64,000 nt of DNA from Schmidtea nova (GCA_044892505.1 CM097882.1:246636001-246700000); one strand, 5' to 3'. Positions 16,981-53,488 are shown, counted from the stretch's first letter. The notes: generated by a model from the letters alone, not told the origin. Program-made: numbers and translations.

Positions 16981-16988
16981 CTACAATT

Positions 16989-17644: not shown

Positions 17645-17645
17645 A

Positions 17646-20299: not shown

Positions 20300-20305
20300 T
20301 ACATG
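20300..20305. repeat. Right 6-bp target-site duplication TACATG
   Basis: Follows CTACCTACT and restores the array unit. Confidence 0.95.
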
Positions 20306-20424
20306 ATTATAATGAAAGGATATTTAGCTATAAAATTTACAAAAATGATCAGTTTTTATTTTGTAATCAAATTATAATCCAAATGAAATTTAAGGAATAT
20401 TACTTTTTTTCATTAAACATCGCA

Positions 20425-20946
20425 CTAAATCATAAACTTTGCAAATGATTGGATTGTCATCATTATTTCTTCGAATATAATGAAGAATTTATTAAAGTTT
20501 GCTTTGAGAATATATTTATGAGATTTATCGCATGATTCAATGAGGCCAATTAATATTCTAATGCATTCAAATAGTACAATTGAAGTATTTTCTGGATTAT
20601 GTAGTTCACGATAAAGTAATTTAACAATTGTTTCTATGCTCGAAACTAAATGTATTTTGTCCCTTAATCTTGGAATAAATCTGGCTATTAGTTTCAAATC
20701 TCTCAATTTATTTATAGAGGAACTATCTTTAAGATTGTCAATAGTTCTTCGTAAAGTTTTCGAAGAAGTTGTCATTAGATATTGAGGAATATCGTCTTTG
20801 AAGACAGTCAATGCTGGATTTTCGTGTTTCAATAACAAAGTCAATTGTTGGTTTTTAATATTAGGATTTGGCTGCGGATAAACTCTAACCGTTTTCACAT
20901 TTCCACGGGTAGATACGACTCTAACAGTTTTATATTCAGTAGACAT
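20425..20946 (-). CDS. Array ORF, 173-aa form (ARM/HEAT-like helical protein)
   Basis: ATG-initiated ORF kept open in all copies. Confidence 0.75.
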   Translation of the reverse strand: MSTEYKTVRVVSTRGNVKTVRVYPQPNPNIKNQQLTLLLKHENPALTVFKDDIPQYLMTTSSKTLRRTIDNLKDSSSINKLRDLKLIARFIPRLRDKIHLVSSIETIVKLLYRELHNPENTSIVLFECIRILIGLIESCDKSHKYILKANFNKFFIIFEEIMMTIQSFAKFMI

Positions 20947-22128
20947 TTCAAAGTATAAGTAATTTTGAGTTAACTAATTTTTATTTGGTAATCTAAATAG
21001 AGATTACGTTTTTATTGATTTATATTCTATAACATTTTATTGGTTAAAATGGAAATGCATATTGAACATTACGAGAGAAAATATTGATTGTTACCTTACA
21101 TATTTAGCAGTTTAAAAAATTATAGATCATTGTGTCTTTAATCATTAGAAATTTATCAAATCATTCCTCTCATATTATCTAAACAGTTATTCTCACATTT
21201 TTAATATTACATGATTTTGACCATATTTTGACCATTTTATTGAATTTAATTTAATTACACTGAATTTCTAAAAAATGATATAAAAATCAAATACCATGTT
21301 ACAATCTCGCTTTAATACGTTGCAATGGTTTCCGATTATTTTTTGAATGTTCACGTTTTTGAATTTATCAAAATATATATATTTGAAAAACATTTAACCA
21401 ATAATTTATAGCTTTAGGCAACAAATTTTAGTTTTAATAAATAGCAAGACGAGATTTGAAAAAAAATATTTTATTATTTATATATGTATATAATAAAAGA
21501 TGTCACATATATCACAAGTAATATTTCTAGAAACTACTTATAAGCAAGCTACTAATTATCAAAAAGAAATGGTTAGAAGAATGCGCTGCACCATTTTTGT
21601 CACATAGCAACGGTTGCTAATTCAAAAATCATCAATAAATACACACAAAACGGCTCATTGCCATGGAATTTATTGCAAAAACAAGTACAAGCGTCGAAAT
21701 ATAATCCCTGAGGTGGCCGTTGCTTTCATTACCAAGTAAACACATAGTAATAAATCAATGCGTCGATTTATTTTCACGACTATCGATAACCAAAAACGAT
21801 ATGAACACAAAGACTGACAAGAATTATTTTATAGTTAAAAATTTTCAACAAATAAAAAATTTTCAGCAATGACTTATTTTGTTATTTAATTATAATTTTA
21901 GATATCAACAAACACTAAATACAAACACTAAAAAACTCTAAAAAAATCTCCTTATTTTTGTGATTTTCAATAAATTCAAATAATTAATACAAAGAGTATT
22001 TGATACATGATTATAATGAAAGGATATTTAGCTATAAAATTTACAAAAATGATCAGTTTTTATTTTGTAATCAAATTATAATCCAAATGAAATTTAAGGA
22101 ATATTATTTTTTTTCATTAAACATCGCA

Positions 22129-22650
22129 CTAAATCATAAACTTTGCAAATGATTGGATTGTCATCATTATTTCTTCGAATATAATGAAGAATTTATTAAA
22201 GTTTGCTTTGAGAATATATTTATGAGATTTATCGCATGATTCAATGAGGCCAATTAATATTCTAATGCATTCAAATAGTACAATTGAAGTATTTTCTGGA
22301 TTATGTAGTTCACGATAAAGTAATTTAACAATTGTTTCTATGCTCGAAACTAAATGTATTTTGTCCCTTAATCTTGGAATAAATCTGGCTATTAGTTTCA
22401 AATCTCTCAATTTATTTATAGAGGAACTATCTTTAAGATTGTCAATAGTTCTTCGTAAAGTTTTCGAAGAAGTTGTCATTAGATATTGAGGAATATCGTC
22501 TTTGAAGACAGTCAATGCTGGATTTTCGTGTTTCAATAACAAAGTCAATTGTTGGTTTTTAATATTAGGATTTGGCTGCGGATAAACTCTAACCGTTTTC
22601 ACATTTCCACGGGTAGATACGACTCTAACAGTTTTATATTCAGTAGACAT
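22129..22650 (-). CDS. Array ORF, 173-aa form
   Basis: Tandem copy. Confidence 0.75.
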   Translation of the reverse strand: MSTEYKTVRVVSTRGNVKTVRVYPQPNPNIKNQQLTLLLKHENPALTVFKDDIPQYLMTTSSKTLRRTIDNLKDSSSINKLRDLKLIARFIPRLRDKIHLVSSIETIVKLLYRELHNPENTSIVLFECIRILIGLIESCDKSHKYILKANFNKFFIIFEEIMMTIQSFAKFMI

Positions 22651-23834
22651 TTCAAAGTATAAGTAATTTTGAGTTAACTAATTTTTATTTGGTAATCTAA
22701 ATAGAGATTACGTTTTTATTGATTTATATTCTATAACATTTTATTGGTTGAAATGGAAATGCATATTGAACATTACGAGAGAAAATAGTAATTGTTACCT
22801 TACATATTTAGCAGTTTAAAAAATTATAGATCATTGTGTCTTTAATCATTAGAAATTTATCAAATCATTCCTCTCATATTATCTAAACAGTTATTCTCAC
22901 ATTTTTAATATTACATGATTTTGACCATATTTTGACCATTTTATTGAATTTAATTTAATTACACTGAATTTCTAAAAAATGATATAAAAATCAAATACCA
23001 TGTTACAATCTCGCTTTAATACGTTGCAATGGTTTCAGATTATTTTTTGAATATTCACGTTTTTGAATTTATCAAAATATATATATAATTGAAAAACATT
23101 TAACCAATAATTTATAGCTTTAGGCAACAAATTTTAGTTTTAATAAATAGCAAGACGAGATTTGAAAAAAAATATTTTATTATTTATATATGTATATAAT
23201 AAAAGATGTCACATATATCACAAGTAATATTTCTAGAAACTACTTATAAGCAAGCTACTAATTATCAAAAAGAAATGGTTAGAAGAATGCGCTGCACCAT
23301 TTTTGTCACATAGCAACGGTTGCTAATTCAAAAATCATCAATAAATACACACAAAACGGCTCATTGCCATGGAATTTATTGCAAAAACAAGTACAAGCGT
23401 CGAAATATAATCCTTGAGGTGGCCGTTGCTTTCATTACCAAGTAAACACATAGTAATAAATCAATGCGTCGATTTATTTTCACGACTATCGATAACCAAA
23501 AACGATATGAACACAAAGACTGACAAGAATTATTTTATAGTTAAAAATTTTCAACAAATAAAAAATTTTCAGCAATGACTAATTTGGTTATTTAATTATA
23601 ATTTTAGATATCAACAAACACTAAATACAAACACTAAAAAACTCTAAAAAAATCTCCTTATTTTTGTGATTTTCAATAAATTCAAATAATTAATACAAAG
23701 AGTATTTGATACATGATTATAATGAAAGGATATTTAGCTATAAAATTTACAAAAATGATCAGTTTTTATTTTGTAATCAAATTATAATCCAAATGAAATT
23801 TAAGGAATATTACTTTTTTTCATTAAACATCGCA

Positions 23835-24356
23835 CTAAATCATAAACTTTGCAAATGATTGGATTGTCATCATTATTTCTTCGAATATAATGAAGAATTT
23901 ATTAAAGTTTGCTTTGAGAATATATTTATGAGATTTATCGCATGATTCAATGAGGCCAATTAATATTCTAATGCATTCAAATAGTACAATTGAAGTATTT
24001 TCTGGATTATGTAGTTCACGATAAAGTAATTTAACAATTGTTTCTATGCTCGAAACTAAATGTATTTTGTCCCTTAATCTTGGAATAAATCTGGCTATTA
24101 GTTTCAAATCTCTCAATTTATTTATAGAGGAACTATCTTTAAGATTGTCAATAGTTCTTCGTAAAGTTTTCGAAGAAGTTGTCATTAGATATTGAGGAAT
24201 ATCGTCTTTGAAGACAGTCAATGCTGGATTTTCGTGTTTCAATAACAAAGTCAATTGTTGGTTTTTAATATTAGGATTTGGCTGCGGATAAACTCTAACC
24301 GTTTTCACATTTCCACGGGTAGATACGACTCTAACAGTTTTATATTCAGTAGACAT
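23835..24356 (-). CDS. Array ORF, 173-aa form
   Basis: Tandem copy. Confidence 0.75.
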   Translation of the reverse strand: MSTEYKTVRVVSTRGNVKTVRVYPQPNPNIKNQQLTLLLKHENPALTVFKDDIPQYLMTTSSKTLRRTIDNLKDSSSINKLRDLKLIARFIPRLRDKIHLVSSIETIVKLLYRELHNPENTSIVLFECIRILIGLIESCDKSHKYILKANFNKFFIIFEEIMMTIQSFAKFMI

Positions 24357-25538
24357 TTCAAAGTATAAGTAATTTTGAGTTAACTAATTTTTATTTGGTA
24401 ATCTAAATAGAGATTACGTTTTTATTGATTTATATTCTATAACATTTTATTGGTTAAAATGGAAATGCATATTGAACATTACGAGAGAAAATATTGATTG
24501 TTACCTTACATATTTAGCAGTTTAAAAAATTATAGATCATTGTGTCTTTAATCATTAGAAATTTATCAAATCATTCCTCTCATATTATCTAAACAGTTAT
24601 TCTCACATTTTTAATATTACATGATTTTGACCATATTTTGACCATTTTATTGAATTTAATTTAATTACACTGAATTTCTAAAAAATGATATAAAAATCAA
24701 ATACCATGTTACAATCTCGCTTTAATACGTTGCAATGGTTTCCGATTATTTTTTGAATGTTCACGTTTTTGAATTTATCAAAATATATATATTTGAAAAA
24801 CATTTAACCAATAATTTATAGCTTTAGGCAACAAATTTTAGTTTTAATAAATAGCAAGACGAGATTTGAAAAAAAATATTTTATTATTTATATATGTATA
24901 TAATAAAAGATGTCACATATATCACAAGTAATATTTCTAGAAACTACTTATAAGCAAGCTACTAATTATCAAAAAGAAATGGTTAGAAGAATGCGCTGCA
25001 CCATTTTTGTCACATAGCAACGGTTGCTAATTCAAAAATCATCAATAAATACACACAAAACGGCTCATTGCCATGGAATTTATTGCAAAAACAAGTACAA
25101 GCGTCGAAATATAATCCCTGAGGTGGCCGTTGCTTTCATTACCAAGTAAACACATAGTAATAAATCAATGCGTCGATTTATTTTCACGACTATCGATAAC
25201 CAAAAACGATATGAACACAAAGACTGACAAGAATTATTTTATAGTTAAAAATTTTCAACAAATAAAAAATTTTCAGCAATGACTTATTTTGTTATTTAAT
25301 TATAATTTTAGATATCAACAAACACTAAATACAAACACTAAAAAACTCTAAAAAAATCTCCTTATTTTTGTGATTTTCAATAAATTCAAATAATTAATAC
25401 AAAGAGTATTTGATACATGATTATAATGAAAGGATATTTAGCTATAAAATTTACAAAAATGATCAGTTTTTATTTTGTAATCAAATTATAATCCAAATGA
25501 AATTTAAGGAATATTATTTTTTTTCATTAAACATCGCA

Positions 25539-26060
25539 CTAAATCATAAACTTTGCAAATGATTGGATTGTCATCATTATTTCTTCGAATATAATGAAGA
25601 ATTTATTAAAGTTTGCTTTGAGAATATATTTATGAGATTTATCGCATGATTCAATGAGGCCAATTAATATTCTAATGCATTCAAATAGTACAATTGAAGT
25701 ATTTTCTGGATTATGTAGTTCACGATAAAGTAATTTAACAATTGTTTCTATGCTCGAAACTAAATGTATTTTGTCCCTTAATCTTGGAATAAATCTGGCT
25801 ATTAGTTTCAAATCTCTCAATTTATTTATAGAGGAACTATCTTTAAGATTGTCAATAGTTCTTCGTAAAGTTTTCGAAGAAGTTGTCATTAGATATTGAG
25901 GAATATCGTCTTTGAAGACAGTCAATGCTGGATTTTCGTGTTTCAATAACAAAGTCAATTGTTGGTTTTTAATATTAGGATTTGGCTGCGGATAAACTCT
26001 AACCGTTTTCACATTTCCACGGGTAGATATGACTCTAACAGTTTTATATTCAGTAGACAT
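25539..26060 (-). CDS. Array ORF, 173-aa form
   Basis: Tandem copy. Confidence 0.75.
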   Translation of the reverse strand: MSTEYKTVRVISTRGNVKTVRVYPQPNPNIKNQQLTLLLKHENPALTVFKDDIPQYLMTTSSKTLRRTIDNLKDSSSINKLRDLKLIARFIPRLRDKIHLVSSIETIVKLLYRELHNPENTSIVLFECIRILIGLIESCDKSHKYILKANFNKFFIIFEEIMMTIQSFAKFMI

Positions 26061-27244
26061 TTCAAAGTATAAGTAATTTTGAGTTAACTAATTTTTATTT
26101 GGTAATCTAAATAGAGATTACGTTTTTATTGATTTATATTCTATAACATTTTATTGGTTGAAATGGAAATGCATATTGAACATTACGAGAGAAAATAGTA
26201 ATTGTTACCTTACATATTTAGCAGTTTAAAAAATTATAGATCATTGTGTCTTTAATCATTAGAAATTTATCAAATCATTCCTCTCATATTATCTAAACAG
26301 TTATTCTCACATTTTTAATATTACATGATTTTGACCATATTTTGACCATTTTATTGAATTTAATTTAATTACACTGAATTTCTAAAAAATGATATAAAAA
26401 TCAAATACCATGTTACAATCTCGCTTTAATACGTTGCAATGGTTTCAGATTATTTTTTGAATATTCACGTTTTTGAATTTATCAAAATATATATATAATT
26501 GAAAAACATTTAACCAATAATTTATAGCTTTAGGCAACAAATTTTAGTTTTAATAAATAGCAAGACGAGATTTGAAAAAAAATATTTTATTATTTATATA
26601 TGTATATAATAAAAGATGTCACATATATCACAAGTAATATTTCTAGAAACTACTTATAAGCAAGCTACTAATTATCAAAAAGAAATGGTTAGAAGAATGC
26701 GCTGCACCATTTTTGTCACATAGCAACGGTTGCTAATTCAAAAATCATCAATAAATACACACAAAACGGCTCATTGCCATGGAATTTATTGCAAAAACAA
26801 GTACAAGCGTCGAAATATAATCCTTGAGGTGGCCGTTGCTTTCATTACCAAGTAAACACATAGTAATAAATCAATGCGTCGATTTATTTTCACGACTATC
26901 GATAACCAAAAACGATATGAACACAAAGACTGACAAGAATTATTTTATAGTTAAAAATTTTCAACAAATAAAAAATTTTCAGCAATGACTAATTTGGTTA
27001 TTTAATTATAATTTTAGATATCAACAAACACTAAATACAAACACTAAAAAACTCTAAAAAAATCTCCTTATTTTTGTGATTTTCAATAAATTCAAATAAT
27101 TAATACAAAGAGTATTTGATACATGATTATAATGAAAGGATATTTAGCTATAAAATTTACAAAAATGATCAGTTTTTATTTTGTAATCAAATTATAATCC
27201 AAATGAAATTTAAGGAATATTATTTTTTTTCATTAAACATCGCA

Positions 27245-27766
27245 CTAAATCATAAACTTTGCAAATGATTGGATTGTCATCATTATTTCTTCGAATATAA
27301 TGAAGAATTTATTAAAGTTTGCTTTGAGAATATATTTATGAGATTTATCGCATGATTCAATGAGGCCAATTAATATTTTAATGCATTCAAATAGTACAAT
27401 TGAAGTATTTTCTGGATTATGTAGTTCACGATAAAGTAATTTAACAATTGTTTCTATGCTCGAAACTAAATGTATTTTGTCCCTTAATCTTGGAATAAAT
27501 CTGGCTATTAGTTTCAAATCTCTCAATTTATTTATAGAGGAACTATCTTTAAGATTGTCAATAGTTCTTCGTAAAGTTTTCGAAGAAGTTGTCATTAGAT
27601 ATTGAGGAATATCGTCTTTGAAGACAGTCAATGCTGGATTTTTGTGTTTCAATAACAAAGTCAATTGTTGGTTTTTGATATTAGGATTTGGCTGCAGATA
27701 AACTCTAACCGTTTTCACATTTCCACGGGTAGATACGACTCTAACAGTTTTATATTCAGTAGACAT
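27245..27766 (-). CDS. Array ORF, 173-aa form
   Basis: Tandem copy. Confidence 0.75.
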   Translation of the reverse strand: MSTEYKTVRVVSTRGNVKTVRVYLQPNPNIKNQQLTLLLKHKNPALTVFKDDIPQYLMTTSSKTLRRTIDNLKDSSSINKLRDLKLIARFIPRLRDKIHLVSSIETIVKLLYRELHNPENTSIVLFECIKILIGLIESCDKSHKYILKANFNKFFIIFEEIMMTIQSFAKFMI

Positions 27767-28913
27767 TTCAAAGTATAAGTAATTTTGAGTTAACTAATTT
27801 TTATTTGGTAATCTAAATAGAGATTACGTTTTTATTGATTTATATTCTATAACATTTTATTGGTTAAAATGGAAAAGCATATTGAACATTACGAGAGAAA
27901 ATATTGATTGTTACCTTACATATTTAGCAGTTTAAAAAATTATAGATCATTGTGTCTTTAATCATTAGAAATTTATCAAATCATTCCTCTCATATTATCT
28001 AAACAGTTATTCTCACATTTTTAATATTACATGATTTTGACCATATTTTGACCATTTTATTGAATTTAATTTAATTACACTGAATTTCTAAAAAATGATA
28101 TAAAAATCAAATACCATGTTACAATCTCGCTTTAATACGTTGCAATGGTTTCAGATTATTTTTTGAATGTTCACGTTTTTGAATTTATCAAAATATATAT
28201 ATTTGAAAAACATTTAACCAATAATTTATAGCTTTAGGCAACAAATTTTAGTTTTAATAAATAGCAAGACGAGATTTGAAAAAAAATATTTTATTATTTA
28301 TATATGTATATAATAAAAGATGTCACATATATCACAAGTAATATTTCTAGAAACTACTTATAAGCAAGCTACTAATTATCAAAAAGAAATGGTTAGAAGA
28401 ATGCGCTGCACCATTTTTGTCACATAGCAACGGTTGCTAATTCAAAAATCATCAATAAATACACACAAAACGGCTCATTGCCATGGAATTTATTGCAAAA
28501 ACAAGTACAAGCGTCGAAATATAATCCCTGAGGTGGCCGTTGCTTTCATTACCAAGTAAACACATAGTAATAAATAAATGCGTCGATTTATTTTCACGAC
28601 TATCGATAACCAAAAACGATATGAACACAAAGACTGACAAGAATTATTTTATAGTTAAAAATTTTCAACAAATAAAAAATTTTCAGCAATGACTTATTTT
28701 GTTATTTAATTATAATTTTAGATATCAACAAACACTAAATACAAACACTAAAAAACTCTAAAAGAATCTCCTTATTTTTGTGATTTTCAATAAATTCAAA
28801 TAATTAATACAAAGAGTATTTGATACATGATTATAATGAAAGGATATTTAGCTATAAAATTTACAAAAATGATCAGTTTTTATTTTGTAATCAAATTATA
28901 ATCCAAATGAAAT

Positions 28914-29471
28914 TTAAGGAATATTACTTTTTTTCATTAAACATCGCACTAAATCATAAACTTTGCAAATGATTGGATTGTCATCATTATTTCTTCGAAT
29001 ATAATGAAGAATTTTATTAAAGTTTGCTTTGAGAATATATTTATGAGATTTATCGCATGATTCAATGAGGCCAATTAATATTCTAATGCATTCAAATAGT
29101 ACAATTGAAGTATTTTCTGGATTATGTAGTTCACGATAAAGTAATTTAACAATTGTTTCTATGCTCGAAACTAAATGTATTTTGTCCCTTAATCTTGGAA
29201 TAAATCTGGCTATTAGTTTCAAATCTCTCAATTTATTTATAGAGGAACTATCTTTAAGATTGTCAATAGTTCTTCGTAAAGTTTTCGAAGAAGTTGTCAT
29301 TAGATATTGAGGAATATCGTCTTTGAAGACAGTCAATGCTGGATTTTCGTGTTTCAATAACAAAGTCAGTTGTTGGTTTTTGATATTAGGATTTGGCTGC
29401 GGATAAACTCTAACCGTTTTCACATTTCCACAGGTAGATACGACTCTAACAGTTTTATATTCAGTAGACAT
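28914..29471 (-). CDS. Array ORF, 185-aa form
   Basis: One extra base gives the C-terminus ILHYIRRNNDDNPIICKVYDLVRCLMKK. Confidence 0.75.
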   Translation of the reverse strand: MSTEYKTVRVVSTCGNVKTVRVYPQPNPNIKNQQLTLLLKHENPALTVFKDDIPQYLMTTSSKTLRRTIDNLKDSSSINKLRDLKLIARFIPRLRDKIHLVSSIETIVKLLYRELHNPENTSIVLFECIRILIGLIESCDKSHKYILKANFNKILHYIRRNNDDNPIICKVYDLVRCLMKKSNIP

Positions 29472-30620
29472 TTCAAAGTATAAGTAATTTTGAGTTAACT
29501 AATTTTTATTTGGTAATCTAAATAGAGATTATGTTTTTATTGATTTATATTCTATAACATTTTATTGGTTAAAATGGAAATGCATATTGAACATTACAAG
29601 AGAAAATAGTGATTGTTACCTTACATATTTATCAGTTTCAAAAATTAGAGATCATTGTGTCTTTAATCATTAGAAATTTATCAAATCATTCCTCTCATAT
29701 TATCTAAACAGTTATTCTCACATTTTTAATATTACATGATTTTGACCATATTTTGACCATTTTATTGAATTTAATTTAATTACACTGAATTTCTAAAAAA
29801 TGATATAAAAATCAAATACCATGTTACAATCTCGCTTTAATACGTTGCAATGGTTTCAGATTATTTTTTGAATGTTCACGTTTTTGAATTTATCAAAATA
29901 TATATATAATTGAAAAACATTTAACCAATAATTTATAGCTTTAGGCAACAAATTTTAGTTTTAATAAATAGCAAGACGAGATTTGAAAAAAAATATTTTA
30001 TTATTTATATATGTATATAATAAAAGATGTCACATATATCACAAGTAATATTTCTAGAAACTACTTATAAGCAAGCTACTAATTATCAAAAAGAAATGGT
30101 TAGAAGAATGCGCTGCACCATTTTTGTCACATAGCAACGGTTGCTAATTCAAAAATCATCAATAAATACACACAAAACGGCTCATTGCCATGGAATTTAT
30201 TGCAAAAACAAGTACAAGCGTCGAAATATAATCCCTGAGGTGGCCGTTGCTTTCATTACCAAGTAAACACATAGTAATAAATAAATGCGTCGATTTATTT
30301 TCACGACTATCGATAACCAAAAACGATATGAACACAAAGACTGACAAGAATTATTTTATAGTTAAAAATTTTCAACAAATAAAAAATTTTCAGCAATGAC
30401 TTATTTTGTTATTTAATTATAATTTTAGATATCAACAAACACTAAATACAAACACTAAAAAACTCTAAAAGAATCTCCTTATTTTTGTGATTTTCAATAA
30501 ATTCAAATAATTAATACAAAGAGTATTTGATACATGATTATAATGAAAGGATATTTAGCTATAAAATTTACAAAAATGATCAGTTTTTATTTTGTAATCA
30601 AATTATAATCCAAATGAAAT

Positions 30621-43109: not shown

Positions 43110-44291
43110 TTCAAAGTATAAGTAATTTTGAGTTAACTAATTTTTATTTGGTAATCTAAATAGAGATTACGTTTTTATTGATTTATATTCTATAACATTT
43201 TATTGGTTAAAATGGAAATGCATATTGAACATTACGAGAGAAAATATTGATTGTTACCTTACATATTTAGCAGTTTAAAAAATTATAGATCATTGTGTCT
43301 TTAATCATTAGAAATTTATCAAATCATTCCTCTCATATTATCTAAACAGTTATTCTCACATTTTTAATATTACATGATTTTGACCATATTTTGACCATTT
43401 TATTGAATTTAATTTAATTACACTGAATTTCTAAAAAATGATATAAAAATCAAATACCATGTTACAATCTCGCTTTAATACGTTGCAATGGTTTCCGATT
43501 ATTTTTTGAATGTTCACGTTTTTGAATTTATCAAAATATATATATTTGAAAAACATTTAACCAATAATTTATAGCTTTAGGCAACAAATTTTAGTTTTAA
43601 TAAATAGCAAGACGAGATTTGAAAAAAAATATTTTATTATTTATATATGTATATAATAAAAGATGTCACATATATCACAAGTAATATTTCTAGAAACTAC
43701 TTATAAGCAAGCTACTAATTATCAAAAAGAAATGGTTAGAAGAATGCGCTGCACCATTTTTGTCACATAGCAACGGTTGCTAATTCAAAAATCATCAATA
43801 AATACACACAAAACGGCTTATTGCCATGGAATTTATTGCAAAAACAAGTACAAGCGTCGAAATATAATCCCTGAGGTGGCCGTTGCTTTCATTACCAAGT
43901 AAACACATAGTAATAAATAAATGCGTCGATTTATTTTCACGACTATCGATAACCAAAAACGATATGAACACAAAGACTGACAAGAATTATTTTATAGTTA
44001 AAAATTTTCAACAAATAAAAAATTTTCAGCAATGACTTATTTTGTTATTTAATTATAATTTTAGATATCAACAAACACTAAATACAAACACTAAAAAACT
44101 CTAAAAAAATCTCCTTATTTTTGTGATTTTCAATAAATTCAAATAATTAATACAAAGAGTATTTGATACATGATTATAATGAAAGGATATTTAGCTATAA
44201 AATTTACAAAAATGATCAGTTTTTATTTTGTAATCAAATTATAATCCAAATGAAATTTAAGGAATATTATTTTTTTTCATTAAACATCGCA

Positions 44292-44813
44292 CTAAATCAT
44301 AAACTTTGCAAATGATTGGATTGTCATCATTATTTCTTCGAATATAATGAAGAATTTATTAAAGTTTGCTTTGAGAATATTATTATGAGATTTATCGCAT
44401 GATTCAATGAGGCCAATTAATATTCTAATGCATTCAAATAGTACAATTGAAGTATTTTCTGGATTATGTAGTTCACGATAAAGTAATTTAACAATTGTTT
44501 CTATGCTCGAAACTAAATGTATTTTGTCCCTTAATCTTGGAATAAATCTGGCTATTAGTTTCAAATCTCTCAATTTATTTATAGAGGAACTATCTTTAAG
44601 ATTGTCAATAGTTCTTCGTAAAGTTTTCGAAGAAGTTGTCATTAGATATTGAGGAATATCGTCTTTGAAGACAGTCAATGCTGGATTTTTGTGTTTCAAT
44701 AACAAAGTCAATTGTTGGTTTTTGATATTAGGATTTGGCTGCAGATAAACTCTAACCGTTTTCACATTTCCACGGGTAGATACGACTCTAACAGTTTTAT
44801 ATTCAGTAGACAT
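44292..44813 (-). CDS. Array ORF, 173-aa form
   Basis: Tandem copy. Confidence 0.75.
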   Translation of the reverse strand: MSTEYKTVRVVSTRGNVKTVRVYLQPNPNIKNQQLTLLLKHKNPALTVFKDDIPQYLMTTSSKTLRRTIDNLKDSSSINKLRDLKLIARFIPRLRDKIHLVSSIETIVKLLYRELHNPENTSIVLFECIRILIGLIESCDKSHNNILKANFNKFFIIFEEIMMTIQSFAKFMI

Positions 44814-45995
44814 TTCAAAGTATAAGTAATTTTGAGTTAACTAATTTTTATTTGGTAATCTAAATAGAGATTACGTTTTTATTGATTTATATTCTATAAC
44901 ATTTTATTGGTTAAAATGGAAATGCATATTGAACATTACGAGAGAAAATATTGATTGTTACCTTACATATTTAGCAGTTTAAAAAATTATAGATCATTGT
45001 GTCTTTAATCATTAGAAATTTATCAAATCATTCCTCTCATATTATCTAAACAGTTATTCTCACATTTTTAATATTACATGATTTTGACCATATTTTGACC
45101 ATTTTATTGAATTTAATTTAATTACACTGAATTTCTAAAAAATGATATAAAAATCAAATACCATGTTACAATCTCGCTTTAATACGTTGCAATGGTTTCC
45201 GATTATTTTTTGAATGTTCACGTTTTTGAATTTATCAAAATATATATATTTGAAAAACATTTAACCAATAATTTATAGCTTTAGGCAACAAATTTTAGTT
45301 TTAATAAATAGCAAGACGAGATTTGAAAAAAAATATTTTATTATTTATATATGTATATAATAAAAGATGTCACATATATCACAAGTAATATTTCTAGAAA
45401 CTACTTATAAGCAAGCTACTAATTATCAAAAAGAAATGGTTAGAAGAATGCGCTGCACCATTTTTGTCACATAGCAACGGTTGTTAATTCAAAAATCATC
45501 AATAAATACACACAAAACTGCTCATTGCCATGGAATTTATTGCAAAAACAAGTACAAGCGTCGAAATATAATCCCTGAGGTGGCCGTTGCTTTCATTACC
45601 AAGTAAACACATAGTAATAAATAAATGCGTCGATTTATTTTCACGACTATCGATAACCAAAAACGATATGAACACAAAGACTGACAAGAATTATTTTATA
45701 GTTAAAAATTTTCAACAAATAAAAAATTTTCAGCAATGACTTATTTTGTTATTTAATTATAATTTTAGATATCAACAAACACTAAATACAAACACTAAAA
45801 AACTCTAAAAAAATCTCCTTATTTTTGTGATTTTCAATAAATTCAAATAATTAATACAAAGAGTATTTGATACATGATTATAATGAAAGGATATTTAGCT
45901 ATAAAATTTACAAAAATGATCAGTTTTTATTTTGTAATCAAATTATAATCCAAATGAAATTTAAGGAATATTATTTTTTTTCATTAAACATCGCA

Positions 45996-46517
45996 CTAAA
46001 TCATAAACTTTGCAAATGATTGGATTGTCATCATTATTTCTTCGAATATAATGAAGAATTTATTAAAGTTTGCTTTGAGAATATTATTATGAGATTTATC
46101 GCATGATTCAATGAGGCCAATTAATATTCTAATGCATTCAAATAGTACAATTGAAGTATTTTCTGGATTATGTAGTTCACGATAAAGTAATTTAACAATT
46201 GTTTCTATGCTCGAAACTAAATGTATTTTGTCCCTTAATCTTGGAATAAATCTGGCTATTAGTTTCAAATCTCTCAATTTATTTATAGAGGAACTATCTT
46301 TAAGATTGTCAATAGTTCTTCGTAAAGTTTTCGAAGAAGTTGTCATTAGATATTGAGGAATATCGTCTTTGAAGACAGTCAATGCTGGATTTTTGTGTTT
46401 CAATAACAAAGTCAATTGTTGGTTTTTGATATTAGGATTTGGCTGCAGATAAACTCTAACCGTTTTCACATTTCCACGGGTAGATACGACTCTAACAGTT
46501 TTATATTCAGTAGACAT
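45996..46517 (-). CDS. Array ORF, 173-aa form
   Basis: Tandem copy. Confidence 0.75.
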   Translation of the reverse strand: MSTEYKTVRVVSTRGNVKTVRVYLQPNPNIKNQQLTLLLKHKNPALTVFKDDIPQYLMTTSSKTLRRTIDNLKDSSSINKLRDLKLIARFIPRLRDKIHLVSSIETIVKLLYRELHNPENTSIVLFECIRILIGLIESCDKSHNNILKANFNKFFIIFEEIMMTIQSFAKFMI

Positions 46518-47699
46518 TTCAAAGTATAAGTAATTTTGAGTTAACTAATTTTTATTTGGTAATCTAAATAGAGATTACGTTTTTATTGATTTATATTCTA
46601 TAACATTTTATTGGTTAAAATGGAAATGCATATTGAACATTACGAGAGAAAATATTGATTGTTACCTTACATATTTAGCAGTTTAAAAAATTATAGATCA
46701 TTGTGTCTTTAATCATTAGAAATTTATCAAATCATTCCTCTCATATTATCTAAACAGTTATTCTCACATTTTTAATATTACATGATTTTGACCATATTTT
46801 GACCATTTTATTGAATTTAATTTAATTACACTGAATTTCTAAAAAATGATATAAAAATCAAATACCATGTTACAATCTCGCTTTAATACGTTGCAATGGT
46901 TTCCGATTATTTTTTGAATGTTCACGTTTTTGAATTTATCAAAATATATATATTTGAAAAACATTTAACCAATAATTTATAGCTTTAGGCAACAAATTTT
47001 AGTTTTAATAAATAGCAAGACGAGATTTGAAAAAAAATATTTTATTATTTATATATGTATATAATAAAAGATGTCACATATATCACAAGTAATATTTCTA
47101 GAAACTACTTATAAGCAAGCTACTAATTATCAAAAAGAAATGGTTAGAAGAATGCGCTGCACCATTTTTGTCACATAGCAACGGTTGCTAATTCAAAAAT
47201 CATCAATAAATACACACAAAACGGCTTATTGCCATGGAATTTATTGCAAAAACAAGTACAAGCGTCGAAATATAATCCCTGAGGTGGCCGTTGCTTTCAT
47301 TACCAAGTAAACACATAGTAATAAATAAATGCGTCGATTTATTTTCACGACTATCGATAACCAAAAACGATATGAACACAAAGACTGACAAGAATTATTT
47401 TATAGTTAAAAATTTTCAACAAATAAAAAATTTTCAGCAATGACTTATTTTGTTATTTAATTATAATTTTAGATATCAACAAACACTAAATACAAACACT
47501 AAAAAACTCTAAAAAAATCTCCTTATTTTTGTGATTTTCAATAAATTCAAATAATTAATACAAAGAGTATTTGATACATGATTATAATGAAAGGATATTT
47601 AGCTATAAAATTTACAAAAATGATCAGTTTTTATTTTGTAATCAAATTATAATCCAAATGAAATTTAAGGAATATTATTTTTTTTCATTAAACATCGCA

Positions 47700-48221
47700 C
47701 TAAATCATAAACTTTGCAAATGATTGGATTGTCATCATTATTTCTTCGAATATAATGAAGAATTTATTAAAGTTTGCTTTGAGAATATTATTATGAGATT
47801 TATCGCATGATTCAATGAGGCCAATTAATATTCTAATGCATTCAAATAGTACAATTGAAGTATTTTCTGGATTATGTAGTTCACGATAAAGTAATTTAAC
47901 AATTGTTTCTATGCTCGAAACTAAATGTATTTTGTCCCTTAATCTTGGAATAAATCTGGCTATTAGTTTCAAATCTCTCAATTTATTTATAGAGGAACTA
48001 TCTTTAAGATTGTCAATAGTTCTTCGTAAAGTTTTCGAAGAAGTTGTCATTAGATATTGAGGAATATCGTCTTTGAAGACAGTCAATGCTGGATTTTTGT
48101 GTTTCAATAACAAAGTCAATTGTTGGTTTTTGATATTAGGATTTGGCTGCAGATAAACTCTAACCGTTTTCACATTTCCACGGGTAGATACGACTCTAAC
48201 AGTTTTATATTCAGTAGACAT
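47700..48221 (-). CDS. Array ORF, 173-aa form
   Basis: Tandem copy. Confidence 0.75.
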   Translation of the reverse strand: MSTEYKTVRVVSTRGNVKTVRVYLQPNPNIKNQQLTLLLKHKNPALTVFKDDIPQYLMTTSSKTLRRTIDNLKDSSSINKLRDLKLIARFIPRLRDKIHLVSSIETIVKLLYRELHNPENTSIVLFECIRILIGLIESCDKSHNNILKANFNKFFIIFEEIMMTIQSFAKFMI

Positions 48222-49404
48222 TTCAAAGTATAAGTAATTTTGAGTTAACTAATTTTTATTTGGTAATCTAAATAGAGATTACGTTTTTATTGATTTATAT
48301 TCTATAACATTTTATTTGTTAAAATGGAAATGCATATTGAACATTACGAGAGAAAATATTGATTGTTACCTTACATATTTAGCAGTTTAAAAAATTATAG
48401 ATCATTGTGTCTTTAATCATTAGAAATTTATCAAATCATTCCTCTCATATTATCTAAACAGTTATTCTCACATTTTTTAATATTACATGATTTTGACCAT
48501 ATTTTGACCATTTTATTGAATTTAATTTAATTACACTGAATTTCTAAAAAATGATATAAAAATCAAATACCATGTTACAATCTCGCTTTAATACGTTGCA
48601 ATGGTTTCCGATTATTTTTTGAATGTTCACGTTTTTGAATTTATCAAAATATATATATTTGAAAAACATTTAACCAATAATTTATAGCTTTAGGCAACAA
48701 ATTTTAGTTTTAATAAATAGCAAGACGAGATTTGAAAAAAAATATTTTATTATTTATATATGTATATAATAAAAGATGTCACATATATCACAAGTAATAT
48801 TTCTAGAAACTACTTATAAGCAAGCTACTAATTATCAAAAAGAAATGGTTAGAAGAATGCGCTGCACCATTTTTGTCACATAGCAACGGTTGCTAATTCA
48901 AAAATCATCAATAAATACACACAAAACGGCTTATTGCCATGGAATTTATTGCAAAAACAAGTACAAGCGTCGAAATATAATCCCTGAGGTGGCCGTTGCT
49001 TTCATTACCAAGTAAACACATAGTAATAAATAAATGCGTCGATTTATTTTCACGACTATCGATAACCAAAAACGATATGAACACAAAGACTGACAAGAAT
49101 TATTTTATAGTTAAAAATTTTCAACAAATAAAAAATTTTCAGCAATGACTTATTTTGTTATTTAATTATAATTTTAGATATCAACAAACACTAAATACAA
49201 ACACTAAAAAACTCTAAAAAAATCTCCTTATTTTTGTGATTTTCAATAAATTCAAATAATTAATACAAAGAGTATTTGATACATGATTATAATGAAAGGA
49301 TATTTAGCTATAAAATTTACAAAAATGATCAGTTTTTATTTTGTAATCAAATTATAATCCAAATAAAATTTAAGGAATATTATTTTTTTTCATTAAACAT
49401 CGCA

Positions 49405-49926
49405 CTAAATCATAAACTTTGCAAATGATTGGATTGTCATCATTATTTCTTCGAATATAATGAAGAATTTATTAAAGTTTGCTTTGAGAATATTATTATG
49501 AGATTTATCGCATGATTCAATGAGGCCAATTAATATTCTAATGCATTCAAATAATACAATTGAAGTATTTTCTGGATTATGTAGTTCACGATAAAGTAAT
49601 TTAACAATTGTTTCTATGCTCGAAACTAAATGTATTTTGTCCCTTAATCTTGGAATAAATCTGGCTATTAGTTTCAAATCTCTCAATTTATTTATAGAGG
49701 AACTATCTTTAAGATTGTCAATAGTTCTTCGTAAAGTTTTCGAAGAAGTTGTCATTAGATATTGAGGAATATCGTCTTTGAAGACAGTCAATGCTGGATT
49801 TTTGTGTTTCAATAACAAAGTCAATTGTTGGTTTTTGATATTAGGATTTGGCTGCAGATAAACTCTAACCGTTTTCACATTTCCACGGGTAGATACGACT
49901 CTAACAGTTTTATATTCAGTAGACAT
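49405..49926 (-). CDS. Array ORF, 173-aa form
   Basis: Tandem copy. Confidence 0.75.
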   Translation of the reverse strand: MSTEYKTVRVVSTRGNVKTVRVYLQPNPNIKNQQLTLLLKHKNPALTVFKDDIPQYLMTTSSKTLRRTIDNLKDSSSINKLRDLKLIARFIPRLRDKIHLVSSIETIVKLLYRELHNPENTSIVLFECIRILIGLIESCDKSHNNILKANFNKFFIIFEEIMMTIQSFAKFMI

Positions 49927-51109
49927 TTCAAAGTATAAGTAATTTTGAGTTAACTAATTTTTATTTGGTAATCTAAATAGAGATTACGTTTTTATTGATT
50001 TATATTCTATAACATTTTATTGGTTAAAATGGAAATGCATATTGAACATTACGAGAGAAAATATTGATTGTTACCTTACATATTTAGCAGTTTAAAAAAT
50101 TATAGATCATTGTGTCTTTAATCATTAGAAATTTATCAAATCATTCCTCTCATATTATCTAAACAGTTATTCTCACATTTTTTAATATTACATGATTTTG
50201 ACCATATTTTGACCATTTTATTGAATTTAATTTAATTACACTGAATTTCTAAAAAATGATATAAAAATCAAATACCATGTTACAATCTCGCTTTAATACG
50301 TTGCAATGGTTTCCGATTATTTTTTGAATGTTCACGTTTTTGAATTTATCAAAATATATATATTTGAAAAACATTTAACCAATAATTTATAGCTTTAGGC
50401 AACAAATTTTAGTTTTAATAAATAGCAAGACGAGATTTGAAAAAAAATATTTTATTATTTATATATGTATATAATAAAAGATGTCACATATATCACAAGT
50501 AATATTTCTAGAAACTACTTATAAGCAAGCTACTAATTATCAAAAAGAAATGGTTAGAAGAATGCGCTGCACCATTTTTGTCACATAGCAACGGTTGCTA
50601 ATTCAAAAATCATCAATAAATACACACAAAACGGCTTATTGCCATGGAATTTATTGCAAAAACAAGTACAAGCGTCGAAATATAATCCCTGAGGTGGCCG
50701 TTGCTTTCATTACCAAGTAAACACATAGTAATAAATAAATGCGTCGATTTATTTTCACGACTATCGATAACCAAAAACGATATGAACACAAAGACTGACA
50801 AGAATTATTTTATAGTTAAAAATTTTCAACAAATAAAAAATTTTCAGCAATGACTTATTTTGTTATTTAATTATAATTTTAGATATCAACAAACACTAAA
50901 TACAAACACTAAAAAACTCTAAAAAAATCTCCTTATTTTTGTGATTTTCAATAAATTCAAATAATTAATACAAAGAGTATTTGATACATGATTATAATGA
51001 AAGGATATTTAGCTATAAAATTTACAAAAATGATCAGTTTTTATTTTGTAATCAAATTATAATCCAAATAAAATTTAAGGAATATTATTTTTTTTCATTA
51101 AACATCGCA

Positions 51110-51631
51110 CTAAATCATAAACTTTGCAAATGATTGGATTGTCATCATTATTTCTTCGAATATAATGAAGAATTTATTAAAGTTTGCTTTGAGAATATTA
51201 TTATGAGATTTATCGCATGATTCAATGAGGCCAATTAATATTCTAATGCATTCAAATAATACAATTGAAGTATTTTCTGGATTATGTAGTTCACGATAAA
51301 GTAATTTAACAATTGTTTCTATGCTCGAAACTAAATGTATTTTGTCCCTTAATCTTGGAATAAATCTGGCTATTAGTTTCAAATCTCTCAATTTATTTAT
51401 AGAGGAACTATCTTTAAGATTGTCAATAGTTCTTCGTAAAGTTTTCGAAGAAGTTGTCATTAGATATTGAGGAATATCGTCTTTGAAGACAGTCAATGCT
51501 GGATTTTTGTGTTTCAATAACAAAGTCAATTGTTGGTTTTTGATATTAGGATTTGGCTGCAGATAAACTCTAACCGTTTTCACATTTCCACGGGTAGATA
51601 CGACTCTAACAGTTTTATATTCAGTAGACAT
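51110..51631 (-). CDS. Array ORF, 173-aa form
   Basis: Tandem copy. Confidence 0.75.
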   Translation of the reverse strand: MSTEYKTVRVVSTRGNVKTVRVYLQPNPNIKNQQLTLLLKHKNPALTVFKDDIPQYLMTTSSKTLRRTIDNLKDSSSINKLRDLKLIARFIPRLRDKIHLVSSIETIVKLLYRELHNPENTSIVLFECIRILIGLIESCDKSHNNILKANFNKFFIIFEEIMMTIQSFAKFMI

Positions 51632-52781
51632 TTCAAAGTATAAGTAATTTTGAGTTAACTAATTTTTATTTGGTAATCTAAATAGAGATTATGTTTTTAT
51701 TGATTTATATTCTATAACATTTTATTGGTTAAAATGGAAATGCATATTGAACATTACGAGAGAAAATATTGATTGTTACCTTACATATTTAGCAGTTTAA
51801 AAAATTATAGATCATTGTGTCTTTAATCATTAGAAATTTATCAAATCATTCCTCTCATATTATCTAAACAGTTATTCTCACATTTTTAATATTACATGAT
51901 TTTGACCATATTTTGACCATTTTATTGAATTTAATTTAATTACACTGAATTTCTAAAAAATGATATAAAAATCAAGTACCATGTTACAATCTCGCTTTAA
52001 TACGTTGCAATGGTTTCCGATTATTTTTTGAATGTTCACGTTTTTGAATTTATCAAAATATATATATTTGAAAAACATTTAACCAATAATTTATAGCTTT
52101 AGGCAACAAATTTTAGTTTTAATAAATAGCAAGATGAGATTTGAAAAAAAATATTTTATTATTTATATATGTATATAATAAAAGATGTCACATATATCAC
52201 AAGTAATATTTCTAGAAACTACTTATAAGCAAGCTACTAATTATCAAAAAGAAATGGTTAGAAGAATGCGCTGCACCATTTTTGTCACATAGCAACGGTT
52301 GCTAATTCAAAAAAATCATCAATAAATACACACAAAACGTCTCATTGCCATGGAATTTATTGCAAAAACAAGTACAAGCGTCGAAATATAATCCCTGAGG
52401 TGGCCGTTGCTTTCATTACCAAATAAACACATATTAATAAATCAATGCGTCGATTTATTTTCTATGGCTATCGATAAAAAAAACGATATGAATACAAAGA
52501 CTGACAAGAATTATTTTATAGTTAAAAATTTTCAACAAATAAAATATTTTCAGCAATGACTTATTTTGTTATTTAATTATAATTTTAGATATCAACAAAC
52601 ACTAAATACAAACACTAAAAAACTCTAAAAAAAATCTCCTTATTTTTGTGATTTTCAATAAATTCAAATAAAAAATACAAAGAGTATTTGATACATGATT
52701 ATAATGAAAGGATATTTAGCTATAAAATTTACAAAAATGATCAGTTTTTATTTTGTAATCAAATTATAATCCAAATGAAAT

Positions 52782-53273
52782 TTAAGGAATATTATTTTTT
52801 TTCATTAAACATCGCACTAAATCATAAACTTTGCAAATGATTGGATTGTCATCATTATTTCTTCGAATATAATGAAGAATTTTATTAAAGTTTGCTTTGA
52901 GAATATATTTATGAGATTTATCGCATGATTCAATGAGGCCAATTAATATTCTAATGCATTCAAATAGTACAATTGAAGTATTTTCTGGATTATGTAGTTC
53001 ACGATAAAGTAATTTAACAATTGTTTCTATGCTCGAAACTAAATGTATTTTGTCCCTTAATCTTGGAATAAATCTGGCTATTAGTTTCAAATCTCTCAAT
53101 TTATTTATAGAGGAACTATCTTTAAGATTGTCAATAGTTCTATGTAAAGTTTTCGAAGAAGTTGTAATCCCTGAGGTGGCTGTTACTTTCATTACCAAGT
53201 AAACACATAGTAATAAATCAATGCGTCGATTTATTTTCACGACTATCGATAACCAAAAACGATATGCACACAA
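52782..53273 (-). pseudogene. Chimeric array ORF from an ~930-bp internal deletion (185-type C-terminus, 5' end lost)
   Basis: Junction GAAGAAGTTGT|AATCCCTGAGG near 53165 joins the ORF body to the upstream GC-richer segment. Confidence 0.85.
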
Positions 53274-53488
53274 AGACTGAGAAGAATTATTTTATAGTTA
53301 AAAATTTTCAACAAATAAAAAATTTGCAGCAATGACTTATTTTGTTATTTAATTATAATTTTAGATATCAACAAACACTAAATTCAAACACTAAAAAACT
53401 CTAAAAAAATCTCCTTATTTTTGTGATTTTCAATAAATTCAAATAATTAATACAAAGAGTAATTAATACAAAAAAGTCGGCAAATTAG

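What the first reader, a model, noticed from the sequence alone, without database searches (positions are those of the whole stretch)
20300..53461. Ampliconic array of about 20 copies of an unrecognised ARM-like gene
Seen: the ORF stays open in 19 consecutive units and in a diverged unit at 63 kb. It has upstream CCAAT- and TATAAAT-like elements and a downstream AATAAA on the coding strand. The helical pattern LKLIAR..LRDKI..SIETIVKLL..IVLFECIRILIGLI..HKYIL..NKILHYI..IICKVYDLVRCL recurs at ~43-48-aa spacing, like armadillo H1-H2-H3 repeats. I do not recognise the family. Inference: an intronless, satellite-like amplified gene in a region that also collects a Polinton and an R2/rDNA fragment resembles conflict-driven amplicons (drivers, suppressors, small-RNA sources). 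It could also be a dosage-amplified germline gene.
Basis: partly seen in the sequence, partly recalled or inferred. Interest (0 to 1): 0.75.

Follow-up and report, generated by a model that had tools for sequence, protein, structure and literature searches.

The report
Tandem array of an orphan gene
A real but unannotated 185-residue helical protein gene has been copied head-to-tail as a 1.7-kb cassette more than twenty times, and most copies share a frameshift that removes the conserved tail, so this looks like an ordinary gene-derived macrosatellite that is mostly decaying.

Summary
The array is real. It has 1704-1707-bp head-to-tail units, all on the minus strand, 99-100% identical. It fills 20300-53470 and reappears at both window ends (1-1428 and 62327-64000), so it is larger than the finding says.

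The gene is real too. Three unannotated 185-aa relatives (39-44% identity, same start and stop) exist among about 15 billion proteins. Among them dN/dS is 0.31-0.38, and the ORF is better conserved than its flanks. A CCAAT box upstream is shared.

"The ORF stays open" is misleading:
- 17 of 20 units carry a 1-bp deletion (A4 to A3) that replaces the last 32 residues, one of the most conserved parts.
- Only three full 185-aa copies lie in the window.
- Within the array the ORF varies as much as the spacer (2.15% against 2.17%).

"ARM-like" holds only weakly, at fold level, with no profile match and no internal sequence repeat.

A complete Polinton-like element (1429-20299, 6-bp duplication) sits inside one unit. 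A 28S fragment and a broken R2 element (53471-62326) split the array.

Best reading: a recently amplified, homogenised, gene-derived macrosatellite whose copies are mostly decaying. A conflict or small-RNA role is untested.

The parts
1..1428 (-). Left continuation of the array. 370-1428 is the distal 1059 bp of the unit split by the Polinton-like element. 1-369 is the start of the next unit (first 123 codons of the ORF), cut by the window edge.
   Evidence: blastn of unit 10 against the window: 100% over 369 bp and 99.0% over 1066 bp. tblastn of the 185-aa protein hits 369..1.
1423..1428 (.). Left copy of the 6-bp target-site duplication (TACATG)
   Evidence: Junctions compared with an intact unit
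1429..20299 (.). Polinton/Maverick-like element, 18,871 bp, inserted into one array unit about 85 bp after the stop codon of that unit's ORF. Terminal inverted repeats of at least 400 bp. Contains three N runs, left as they are.
   Evidence: Both ends are mutual reverse complements (93% over 400 bp) and start AG...CT, with a 6-bp duplication. A32-like ATPase, chromodomain and TBP-fold ORFs. The 1329-aa ORF has 52-55% identical relatives, one carrying PF03175 DNA_pol_B_2.
4675..8664 (-). 1329-aa ORF of the element, probably a protein-primed B-family DNA polymerase
   Evidence: Only a weak Endonuclease_7 match in Pfam and no PDB sequence match. The closest relative, P0004 (55% identity, 83% coverage), is marked PF03175.
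15629..16252 (-). 207-aa ORF of the element, an A32-like packaging ATPase
   Evidence: PF04665 Pox_A32, E 5e-07, 29.9 bits against a cut-off of 22.8
20300..20305 (.). Right copy of the 6-bp target-site duplication (TACATG)
20300..20946 (-). Proximal 647 bp of the unit split by the element. Its 173-aa ORF (20425-20946) is untouched by the insertion.
20947..51631 (-). Main block of 18 complete 1704-1707-bp units, each with promoter-like region, ORF and spacer. 16 units have the 173-aa frameshifted ORF and 2 units have the 185-aa ORF.
28914..29471 (-). 185-aa ORF in the ancestral frame (unit 6). A second identical one lies at 30621-31178 (unit 7).
   Evidence: Same length and same stop position as relatives P0001, P0002 and P0003, with the C-terminus aligned to the end
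29564..29568 (-). CCAAT box 97 bp before the ATG (shown for unit 6). The same box with the same flanking bases lies at -87 in all four related contigs.
   Evidence: Changed to CAAAT in 4 of the 19 array units.
29543..29549 (-). TATAAAT 78 bp before the ATG (unit 6). Present in all 19 array units, but not at that position in the 63-kb copy or the relatives.
28879..28884 (-). AATAAA 30 bp after the stop codon (unit 6)
   Evidence: A weak signal, because the motif occurs 10 times per unit on this strand.
51632..53470 (-). Rearranged end unit. Unit positions 644-949 are joined to positions 175-1704. It gives a chimeric 163-codon reading frame (52782-53273) without the native start but with the ancestral C-terminal frame.
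53471..62326 (+). Foreign block of 8.9 kb with about 40% G+C that splits the array. It holds a 28S fragment, tandem repeats and an R2-clade element. The array resumes at a different unit position (1359 against 644), so unit sequence was lost or rearranged here.
53491..53769 (+). Fragment of large-subunit ribosomal RNA gene
   Evidence: Rfam LSU_rRNA_eukarya, 88.3 bits (gathering score 50), E 3.8e-21, model positions 1909-2343. Missed by the whole-window scans.
57034..60048 (+). R2-clade retrotransposon protein gene, broken. The reverse transcriptase, the following region and the C-terminal endonuclease region lie in three ORF pieces in two reading frames.
   Evidence: Best PDB sequence matches are R2 proteins: 8gh6, E 1e-61 for the RT piece, with C-terminal pieces at E 1e-20 and 7e-12. 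PF00078, E 8.5e-36.
62327..64000 (-). Right continuation of the array, an older and more diverged sub-array (97.9% and 94.5% identical to the main block). Runs off the window.
63154..63711 (-). 185-aa ORF of the diverged copy. It differs from unit 6 at 7 of 558 bases (4 replacement, 3 silent). One replacement falls in the 13-residue block that is otherwise invariant in the family.

Best explanation
This is a gene-derived macrosatellite. A lineage-restricted, intronless gene encodes a 185-residue protein with a poorly ordered N-terminal third that carries one conserved motif, followed by a compact bundle of six or seven helices of armadillo-like appearance.

The gene was amplified together with its own promoter region and 3' flank as a 1.7-kb cassette. 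Repeated unequal exchange or gene conversion then homogenised the array. That mechanism is inferred from the mosaic pattern of variants, from runs of identical units in the centre, and from older copies at the edge.

During homogenisation a 1-bp deletion that destroys the conserved C-terminus spread to 17 of 20 units. At most three copies in this window can make the family-type protein. The rest are pseudogene units, or at best make a truncated product.

The array tolerates large insertions (a Polinton-like element, and an R2/28S block), as repeat-rich, weakly constrained chromatin does.

Shown here: the array anatomy, the frameshift, the authenticity and selective constraint of the gene family, and the two insertions.
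Inferred: the amplification mechanism and the decay of most copies.
Unknown: transcription, and what the protein binds.
For: Array anatomy:
- Period 1704-1707 bp, all units in one orientation, 98.9-100% identical. It extends to both window ends.
- Five units are identical to each other and the others are mosaics of a few variants. The edge copies keep the ancestral state.

The gene is real:
- An exhaustive HMMER search of 1.84 billion representatives gives one relative, at E 3.7e-29. A profile word search and a cluster look-up add two more.
- All relatives are exactly 185 aa, and 63 columns are invariant.
- dN/dS is 0.31-0.38 among relatives (Fisher p 2e-05 for L001 against L002) and 0.44-0.51 against the window, with dS above 1.
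- The ORF is less diverged than its flanks: 26/558 against 59/595, p 7e-04, and 0/558 against 7/452, p 0.0035.
- The CCAAT box is shared at about -90.

Decay within the array:
- The 1-bp deletion is present in 17 of 20 units.
- The lost tail has 15 invariant columns in the last 34 residues. It lies in the best-predicted part of the model.
- Variable columns are 12/558 in the ORF against 25/1150 in the spacer. Replacement to silent changes are 8:3, giving dN/dS of about 0.7.
- The CCAAT box is mutated in 4 units.
- Two large insertions interrupt the array.
Against: - The variants within the array are few and not independent, so the test for relaxed constraint is weak. Family-level constraint is rejected only at p about 0.04.
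- No unit has a nonsense mutation or a lost start codon, and the promoter-like motifs are kept in most units.
- A 173-aa product lacking the C-terminus could be functional. By analogy, Stellate lacks the C-terminal domain of its parent (PMC7874207).
- Nothing here shows whether any copy is transcribed.
- The organism and chromosome are unknown.
- The copy number of the gene in the relatives is unknown. Their contigs are 1-1.9 kb and end in simple repeats.
Confidence: 0.6

Rival explanations
1. It is a selected amplicon, driven by dosage or by genetic conflict. Many copies are expressed, for example in the germline. The C-terminally truncated 173-aa form is the active product or an antagonist of the full-length protein, as in Stellate-type systems.
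For: - Every unit keeps its start codon. Most keep the CCAAT box, and all array units keep the TATAAAT.
- There are no nonsense mutations.
- The frameshift allele has risen to 17 of 20 units, which could reflect selection as well as drift.
- The gene family is under selection elsewhere.
- Tandemly amplified small protein genes of this size are known drivers. Stellate makes 17-18 kDa proteins and lacks the parent's C-terminal domain (PMC7874207).
Against: - ORF and spacer vary equally, and dN/dS is about 0.7 within the array.
- The lost tail is among the most conserved parts of the protein.
- Four units have lost the conserved CCAAT box.
- There are no expression data and no sex-linkage data.
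Confidence: 0.2
2. It is a small-RNA source locus of the Su(Ste) or piRNA-cluster type. Read-through or antisense transcription across the homogeneous units, possibly started in the inserted elements, yields small RNAs that regulate the few intact copies or a paralogue elsewhere.
For: - The region is repeat-rich and invaded by transposons.
- The R2-clade gene and the 28S fragment lie on the strand opposite to the array genes, so read-through from them would be antisense to the right-hand sub-array.
- Known macrosatellites give sense and antisense transcripts and small RNAs (PMC5687341).
Against: - All unit copies in the window have one orientation, with no inverted copies.
- There are no small-RNA data.
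- The R2 gene is broken.
Confidence: 0.1
3. It is an assembly artefact. A much shorter array, or a single gene, was over-expanded by the assembler. The 1-bp difference in a run of A is a consensus-calling error.
For: - Five units are identical.
- The frameshift lies in a short homopolymer, A4 against A3.
Against: - The units carry 37 variable columns in linked, mosaic combinations. The indel state co-varies with neighbouring substitutions.
- Two different insertions with clean junctions interrupt the array, one with a 6-bp duplication.
- The edge copies are 2% diverged.
Confidence: 0.05

Closest known systems
ORF-bearing macrosatellites of mammals, such as the TAF11-like array (3.4-kb units, each with a 594-bp ORF for a 198-aa protein) and D4Z4/DUX4 (PMC5687341, PMC12376486)
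   Same: - Kilobase-sized head-to-tail units.
- One short intronless ORF per unit, with its own upstream region.
- High identity between units.
- The ORF is conserved in related species.
- The ORF length (558 bp, 185 aa) is almost the same as in the TAF11-like array.
   Different: - A different organism, very A+T-rich and probably an invertebrate or protist, not identified.
- The protein has no recognisable family.
- Most units here share a frameshift.
- Copy-number variation, chromatin state and expression are unknown.
Stellate / Su(Ste) tandem arrays of Drosophila melanogaster (PMC7874207)
   Same: - A small protein gene (17-18 kDa there, about 21 kDa here) amplified in tandem.
- The amplified form lacks the C-terminal part present in the family's standard form.
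- Transposon insertions lie in and around the arrays.
   Different: - No parent gene with introns was found.
- There is no evidence of sex linkage, of a homologous suppressor array, of antisense transcripts or of small RNAs.
- The Stellate protein has a known fold family (CK2 beta), and this one does not.
Armadillo-repeat proteins (beta-catenin and designed ARM proteins, the best structural matches)
   Same: - Residues 62-181 are predicted as a stack of helices.
- The best PDB matches are the first four repeats of beta-catenin and designed armadillo proteins. TM relative to the query is 0.44-0.50, with rmsd 3.1-3.7 A over 115-118 columns for the best ones.
   Different: - No match at E <= 0.001.
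- No Arm or HEAT profile match.
- No internal sequence repeat.
- There is room for only two to three repeats.
- Model confidence is moderate.

Membership tests
Armadillo/HEAT-type helical repeat proteins | Sequence match to an Arm, HEAT or related repeat profile | tested here: not met
   Pfam scans of the window proteins and of all five family members at E up to 10 gave only a sub-threshold DUF4306 match. PDB sequence and profile searches gave nothing below E 0.1.
Armadillo/HEAT-type helical repeat proteins | Tandem internal repeats of about 40-47 residues | tested here: not met
   Local alignment of residues 59-120 against 121-185 scores no better than shuffles in any of the five members (shuffles reaching the observed score: 15-91%).
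Armadillo/HEAT-type helical repeat proteins | Alpha-solenoid fold of stacked helical hairpins or triplets | tested here: inconclusive
   AlphaFold2 with a 5-sequence alignment gives pLDDT 67.3 and pTM 0.60, with seven helices between residues 62 and 181. The top Foldseek PDB matches are mostly armadillo repeats, but the best E is 0.028 and TM about 0.5.
ORF-bearing macrosatellite / tandemly amplified gene array | Head-to-tail units of 1 kb or more, many copies, high identity | tested here: met
   Unit of 1704-1707 bp. At least 23 unit instances in the window. 98.9-100% identity in the main block.
ORF-bearing macrosatellite / tandemly amplified gene array | A protein-coding ORF in each unit that is conserved in other species | tested here: met
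   There is an ORF in every unit. Relatives of the same length have dN/dS of 0.31-0.38. However, 17 of 20 units here carry a frameshift.
ORF-bearing macrosatellite / tandemly amplified gene array | Copy number variable among individuals | not testable with these tools
   No reads and no other assemblies of this genome are available.
Conflict amplicon of the Stellate/Su(Ste) kind | Homologous array in the opposite sense, or antisense transcripts giving small RNAs | tested here: not met
   All copies in the 64-kb window have the same orientation. Transcripts and small RNAs cannot be tested here.
Conflict amplicon of the Stellate/Su(Ste) kind | Sex-chromosome linkage and germline-restricted expression | not testable with these tools
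   No chromosome assignment and no expression data.
Polinton/Maverick elements (the left neighbour) | 6-bp target-site duplication and long terminal inverted repeats | tested here: met
   TACATG is duplicated at 1423-1428 and 20300-20305. The inverted repeats are at least 400 bp at 93% identity. That these features, and AG...CT ends, are typical of Polintons is from my own knowledge of the family.
Polinton/Maverick elements (the left neighbour) | Protein-primed B-family polymerase, retroviral-type integrase, packaging ATPase, capsid genes and protease | tested here: inconclusive
   - ATPase: met (PF04665).
- Polymerase: supported only through a 55%-identical relative marked PF03175, with no direct Pfam or PDB match.
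- Integrase: only a chromodomain was found.
- Capsid genes and protease: not found in the Pfam scans of the ORFs tested.
R2 retrotransposons (the right neighbour) | Reverse transcriptase and C-terminal endonuclease region closest to R2 proteins | tested here: met
   The best PDB matches of all three ORF pieces are R2 proteins.
R2 retrotransposons (the right neighbour) | Insertion at the specific 28S target site | tested here: inconclusive
   A 28S fragment is present (53491-53769), but it lies about 3.3 kb before the R2 gene with tandem repeats between them. No 28S was detected after the element.

The most novel reading that the evidence does not exclude
The array is an active conflict system. 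A truncated form of a young, lineage-restricted armadillo-like protein has been driven to high copy number. It is held in check by small RNAs made from antisense transcription that starts in the inserted elements. This would be an independent analogue of Stellate/Su(Ste), built on a protein family that is annotated nowhere.
Probability: 0.1. Interest if true: 0.75.

Novelty: new member of a known kind. Interest (0 to 1): 0.4.

Why it matters
- It adds an unannotated protein family. There are four lineages, all exactly 185 residues and all under purifying selection, and none carries a name in a collection of about 15 billion proteins.
- It is a clean, datable example of a short gene turning into a macrosatellite. 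Ancestral copies sit at the edges, a loss-of-tail allele has swept the centre, and two mobile-element insertions mark the array.
- If expression data showed that the truncated allele is the expressed one, the locus would become a candidate for a new conflict-type amplicon. If not, it is a textbook case of how near-identical repeats can mimic 'conserved open reading frames'.

Tried and rejected
Searches that found nothing:
- Pfam scans, PDB sequence searches and PDB profile searches of the array protein.
- Word-index protein search with the single protein.
- Rfam on the whole window and on two units, and a tRNA scan. So the unit carries no known RNA gene.
- Foldseek against viral models and pattern scans of viral and JGI metagenome contigs. 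So there is no sign that the gene is viral cargo.
- Internal-repeat test: negative.
- Degenerate copies of the ORF in the spacer, or internal repeats of the unit: none.
- Literature search for the four sequencing-run accessions, to name the organisms: none found. The organism stays unidentified. The only hint is that the R2 gene's best match, 8gh6, is to my knowledge (not shown in the tool output) the silkworm R2 protein; this fits an arthropod host but proves nothing.

Left unresolved:
- Whether the relatives are tandem in their genomes. Contig L001 has the same simple repeat at both ends, L002 has inverted ones, and neither shows unit-length self-overlap.
- The 28S fragment was missed by two broader Rfam runs and found only in a narrow run.

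Rejected idea:
- A longer, intron-containing parent. The exhaustive search has no length limit and found only 185-aa relatives.

Full report
**1. The observation**

The window is very A+T-rich: 24-26% G+C across the array, against about 40% in 54-62 kb. Exact 20-mers recur at spacings of 1704-1707 bp.

A blastn of one unit against the window shows the following, all in one orientation with the gene on the minus strand:
- 18 complete units from 20947 to 51631, 98.9-100% identical.
- A partial unit at 20300-20946.
- A rearranged end unit at 51632-53470.
- Further unit sequence at 1-1428 (99-100% identical) and at 62327-64000 (97.9% and 94.5%).

It runs off both ends of the window.

**2. The ORFs**

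Nineteen consecutive ATG-started ORFs lie between 20425 and 51631, and a further one at 63154-63711. They are not all the same gene product.
That frame is found in only two array units (28914-29471 and 30621-31178), in the 63-kb copy, and, without its start, in the rearranged end unit.
- The other 17 units encode 173 aa. One A is missing from a run of four, so the frame changes after residue 153 and the last 32 residues are replaced by 20 unrelated ones.
- The indel state is linked to neighbouring substitutions in mosaic haplotypes. It is therefore unlikely to be a random consensus-calling error.

**3. Is it a real gene?**

Pfam, PDB sequence search and the word-index protein search found nothing. 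Because the claim rested on the absence of relatives, I ran the exhaustive HMMER search.
- Among 1.84 billion representatives there is one relative, P0001, 185 aa, E 3.7e-29.
- A profile search and a cluster look-up add P0002 and P0003, also 185 aa.
- All come only from unannotated Logan contigs of four sequencing runs. These contigs are 1.0-1.9 kb with 19-23% G+C.
- The exact window proteins are in no public collection searched.

The evidence for a coding gene is strong:
- The relatives are 39-44% identical to the window protein and 70-91% identical to each other. They have the same start and stop positions and 63 invariant columns.
- dN/dS is 0.31-0.38 among the relatives (Fisher p 2e-05) and 0.44-0.51 against the window, with dS above 1.
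- The ORF is less diverged than its flanks: 26/558 against 59/595, p 7e-04, and 0/558 against 7/452, p 0.0035.
- Beyond about 190 bp upstream and a short 3' block, the flanks of the relatives no longer align with each other. They do not align with the window's spacer at all.
- A CCAAT box with the same flanking bases lies at -97 in the window and -87 in all relatives.

So this is a genuine, intronless, lineage-restricted protein gene. The 185-aa frame is the ancestral one, because the relatives align to the very end of it.

**4. State of the copies in the array**

- The tail removed by the frameshift has 15 invariant columns in the last 34 residues. It is one of the most conserved parts of the protein, and it lies in the best-predicted part of the model.
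- Among the 18 full units, 12 of 558 ORF columns vary against 25 of 1150 spacer columns (2.15% against 2.17%).
- ORF substitutions are 8 replacement to 3 silent, giving dN/dS of about 0.7. This is indistinguishable from neutrality. Constraint at the family's level is rejected only weakly, at p about 0.04.
- Four units have the conserved CCAAT box changed to CAAAT.
- The 63-kb copy differs from unit 6 at 7 ORF positions (4 replacement, 3 silent) and 17 of 747 spacer positions. One replacement falls in the otherwise invariant 13-residue block.

With so few differences, 'open in 19 units' is simply what near-identity gives.

**5. The protein**

AlphaFold2 on the single sequence gave pLDDT 58. With the five-sequence alignment it gave pLDDT 67.3 and pTM 0.60. 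Residues 1-60 are poorly ordered, and residues 62-181 form seven helices with pLDDT 76-87 from residue 101 onwards.

Foldseek against the PDB gives no match at E <= 0.001. The best matches are nevertheless dominated by armadillo repeats:
- The first four repeats of beta-catenin, E 0.028, TM 0.50.
- Designed armadillo proteins, rmsd 3.1-3.7 A over 115-118 columns.

The viral model library gives nothing. There is no internal sequence repeat. 'ARM-like' is therefore a reasonable description of the predicted fold, but it is not family membership.

**6. The surroundings**

*Left neighbour.* The left break in the array is a clean insertion.
- An intact unit reads straight through the site.
- In the window the 6-bp string TACATG is duplicated at 1423-1428 and 20300-20305.
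- Between the two copies lie 18,871 bp with terminal inverted repeats of at least 400 bp and AG...CT ends.

Inside the element are:
- an A32-like ATPase, a chromodomain and a TBP-fold ORF;
- a 1329-aa ORF whose 55%-identical relative is marked as a protein-primed type B polymerase.

It sits about 85 bp after the stop codon of one unit and leaves that unit's ORF intact. It contains three N runs, which I left alone.

*Right neighbour.* The right break, 53471-62326, holds:
- a 28S fragment (Rfam, 88.3 bits);
- several tandem repeats;
- an R2-clade protein gene (57034-60048). Its reverse transcriptase, middle and endonuclease parts all match R2 proteins best, but they lie in three ORF pieces in two frames. 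That means at least two frame changes, so the gene is broken.

The array resumes at a different unit position, so unit sequence was lost or rearranged there.

*One oddity.* This junction and the Polinton-like insertion fall within about 10 bp of the same unit position (note 4). The chance of that is about 1%. It is unexplained.

**7. Explanation**

The best-supported reading is a gene-derived macrosatellite. A young orphan gene was amplified with its own flanks and homogenised by unequal exchange or conversion. The evidence for that is the mosaic variants, identical central units and older edge copies. A tail-destroying allele swept most units, and the array tolerates large insertions.

The rival readings cannot be excluded without expression data and reads. 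They are a selected dosage or conflict amplicon, a small-RNA source, and assembly over-expansion. I rate them at about 0.2, 0.1 and 0.05.

**8. Comparison and novelty**

The closest known things are:
- ORF-bearing macrosatellites: the TAF11-like array, with a 594-bp ORF for 198 aa in each 3.4-kb unit, and D4Z4/DUX4 (PMC5687341; PMC12376486).
- The Stellate arrays of Drosophila, whose 17-18 kDa product also lacks its parent's C-terminal domain (PMC7874207).

This is a new member of that known kind, built on a protein family that has no name.

**9. Limits and slips**

- The organism is not identified.
- I did not fetch relatives of the Polinton-like element, align across the R2 frame changes, or fill the N runs.
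- The coordinates of the separate R2 ORF pieces are in my tool queries and my reasoning, but not in this report.

Noticed in passing
window 16346-16813 (+), inside the Polinton-like element: A 155-aa ORF with one TBP-fold repeat (PF00352, E 4.7e-14, 52 bits against a cut-off of 22.9). A TATA-binding-protein-like gene is unusual cargo for such an element.
   Followed up: no
window 4675-8664 (-): The 1329-aa polymerase-like ORF has a weak Endonuclease VII-type match in its middle (residues 602-641, E 5e-04). A 52%-identical relative (P0006) carries the same Pfam mark, so the inserted nuclease-like module may be a shared feature of this group.
   Followed up: partly
window 1423-1428 / 20300-20305 and 53470/53471: The Polinton-like insertion and the edge of the rDNA/R2 block fall within about 10 bp of the same position in the array unit, about 85 bp after the stop codon. 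The chance of this is about 1%. It may be an insertion or breakage hot spot.
   Followed up: partly
window 1630-2567 and 19786-20100: 15-bp tandem sub-repeats lie inside both terminal inverted repeats of the Polinton-like element (58.7 and 20.7 copies). They are reverse complements of each other and differ in copy number.
   Followed up: no
window 53770-57033: Between the 28S fragment and the R2-clade gene lie a 255-bp x 3.5 tandem repeat (54515-55402, 95% matches), a 9-bp x 17.6 repeat (56306-56461) and a 111-bp x 1.9 repeat (56545-56762). Their origin is unknown.
   Followed up: no
L001-L004 (Logan contigs of SRR13496040, ERR15397304, SRR27560321, SRR20852515): A short block about 70-120 bp after the stop codon is conserved among all the relatives and recognisable in the window unit, next to the two junctions above. 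It may be a 3'-end signal.
   Followed up: partly
window 52782-53273 (-): The rearranged end unit creates a chimeric reading frame. Spacer-derived codons are fused to residues 59-185 of the ancestral frame, with no native start codon.
   Followed up: yes
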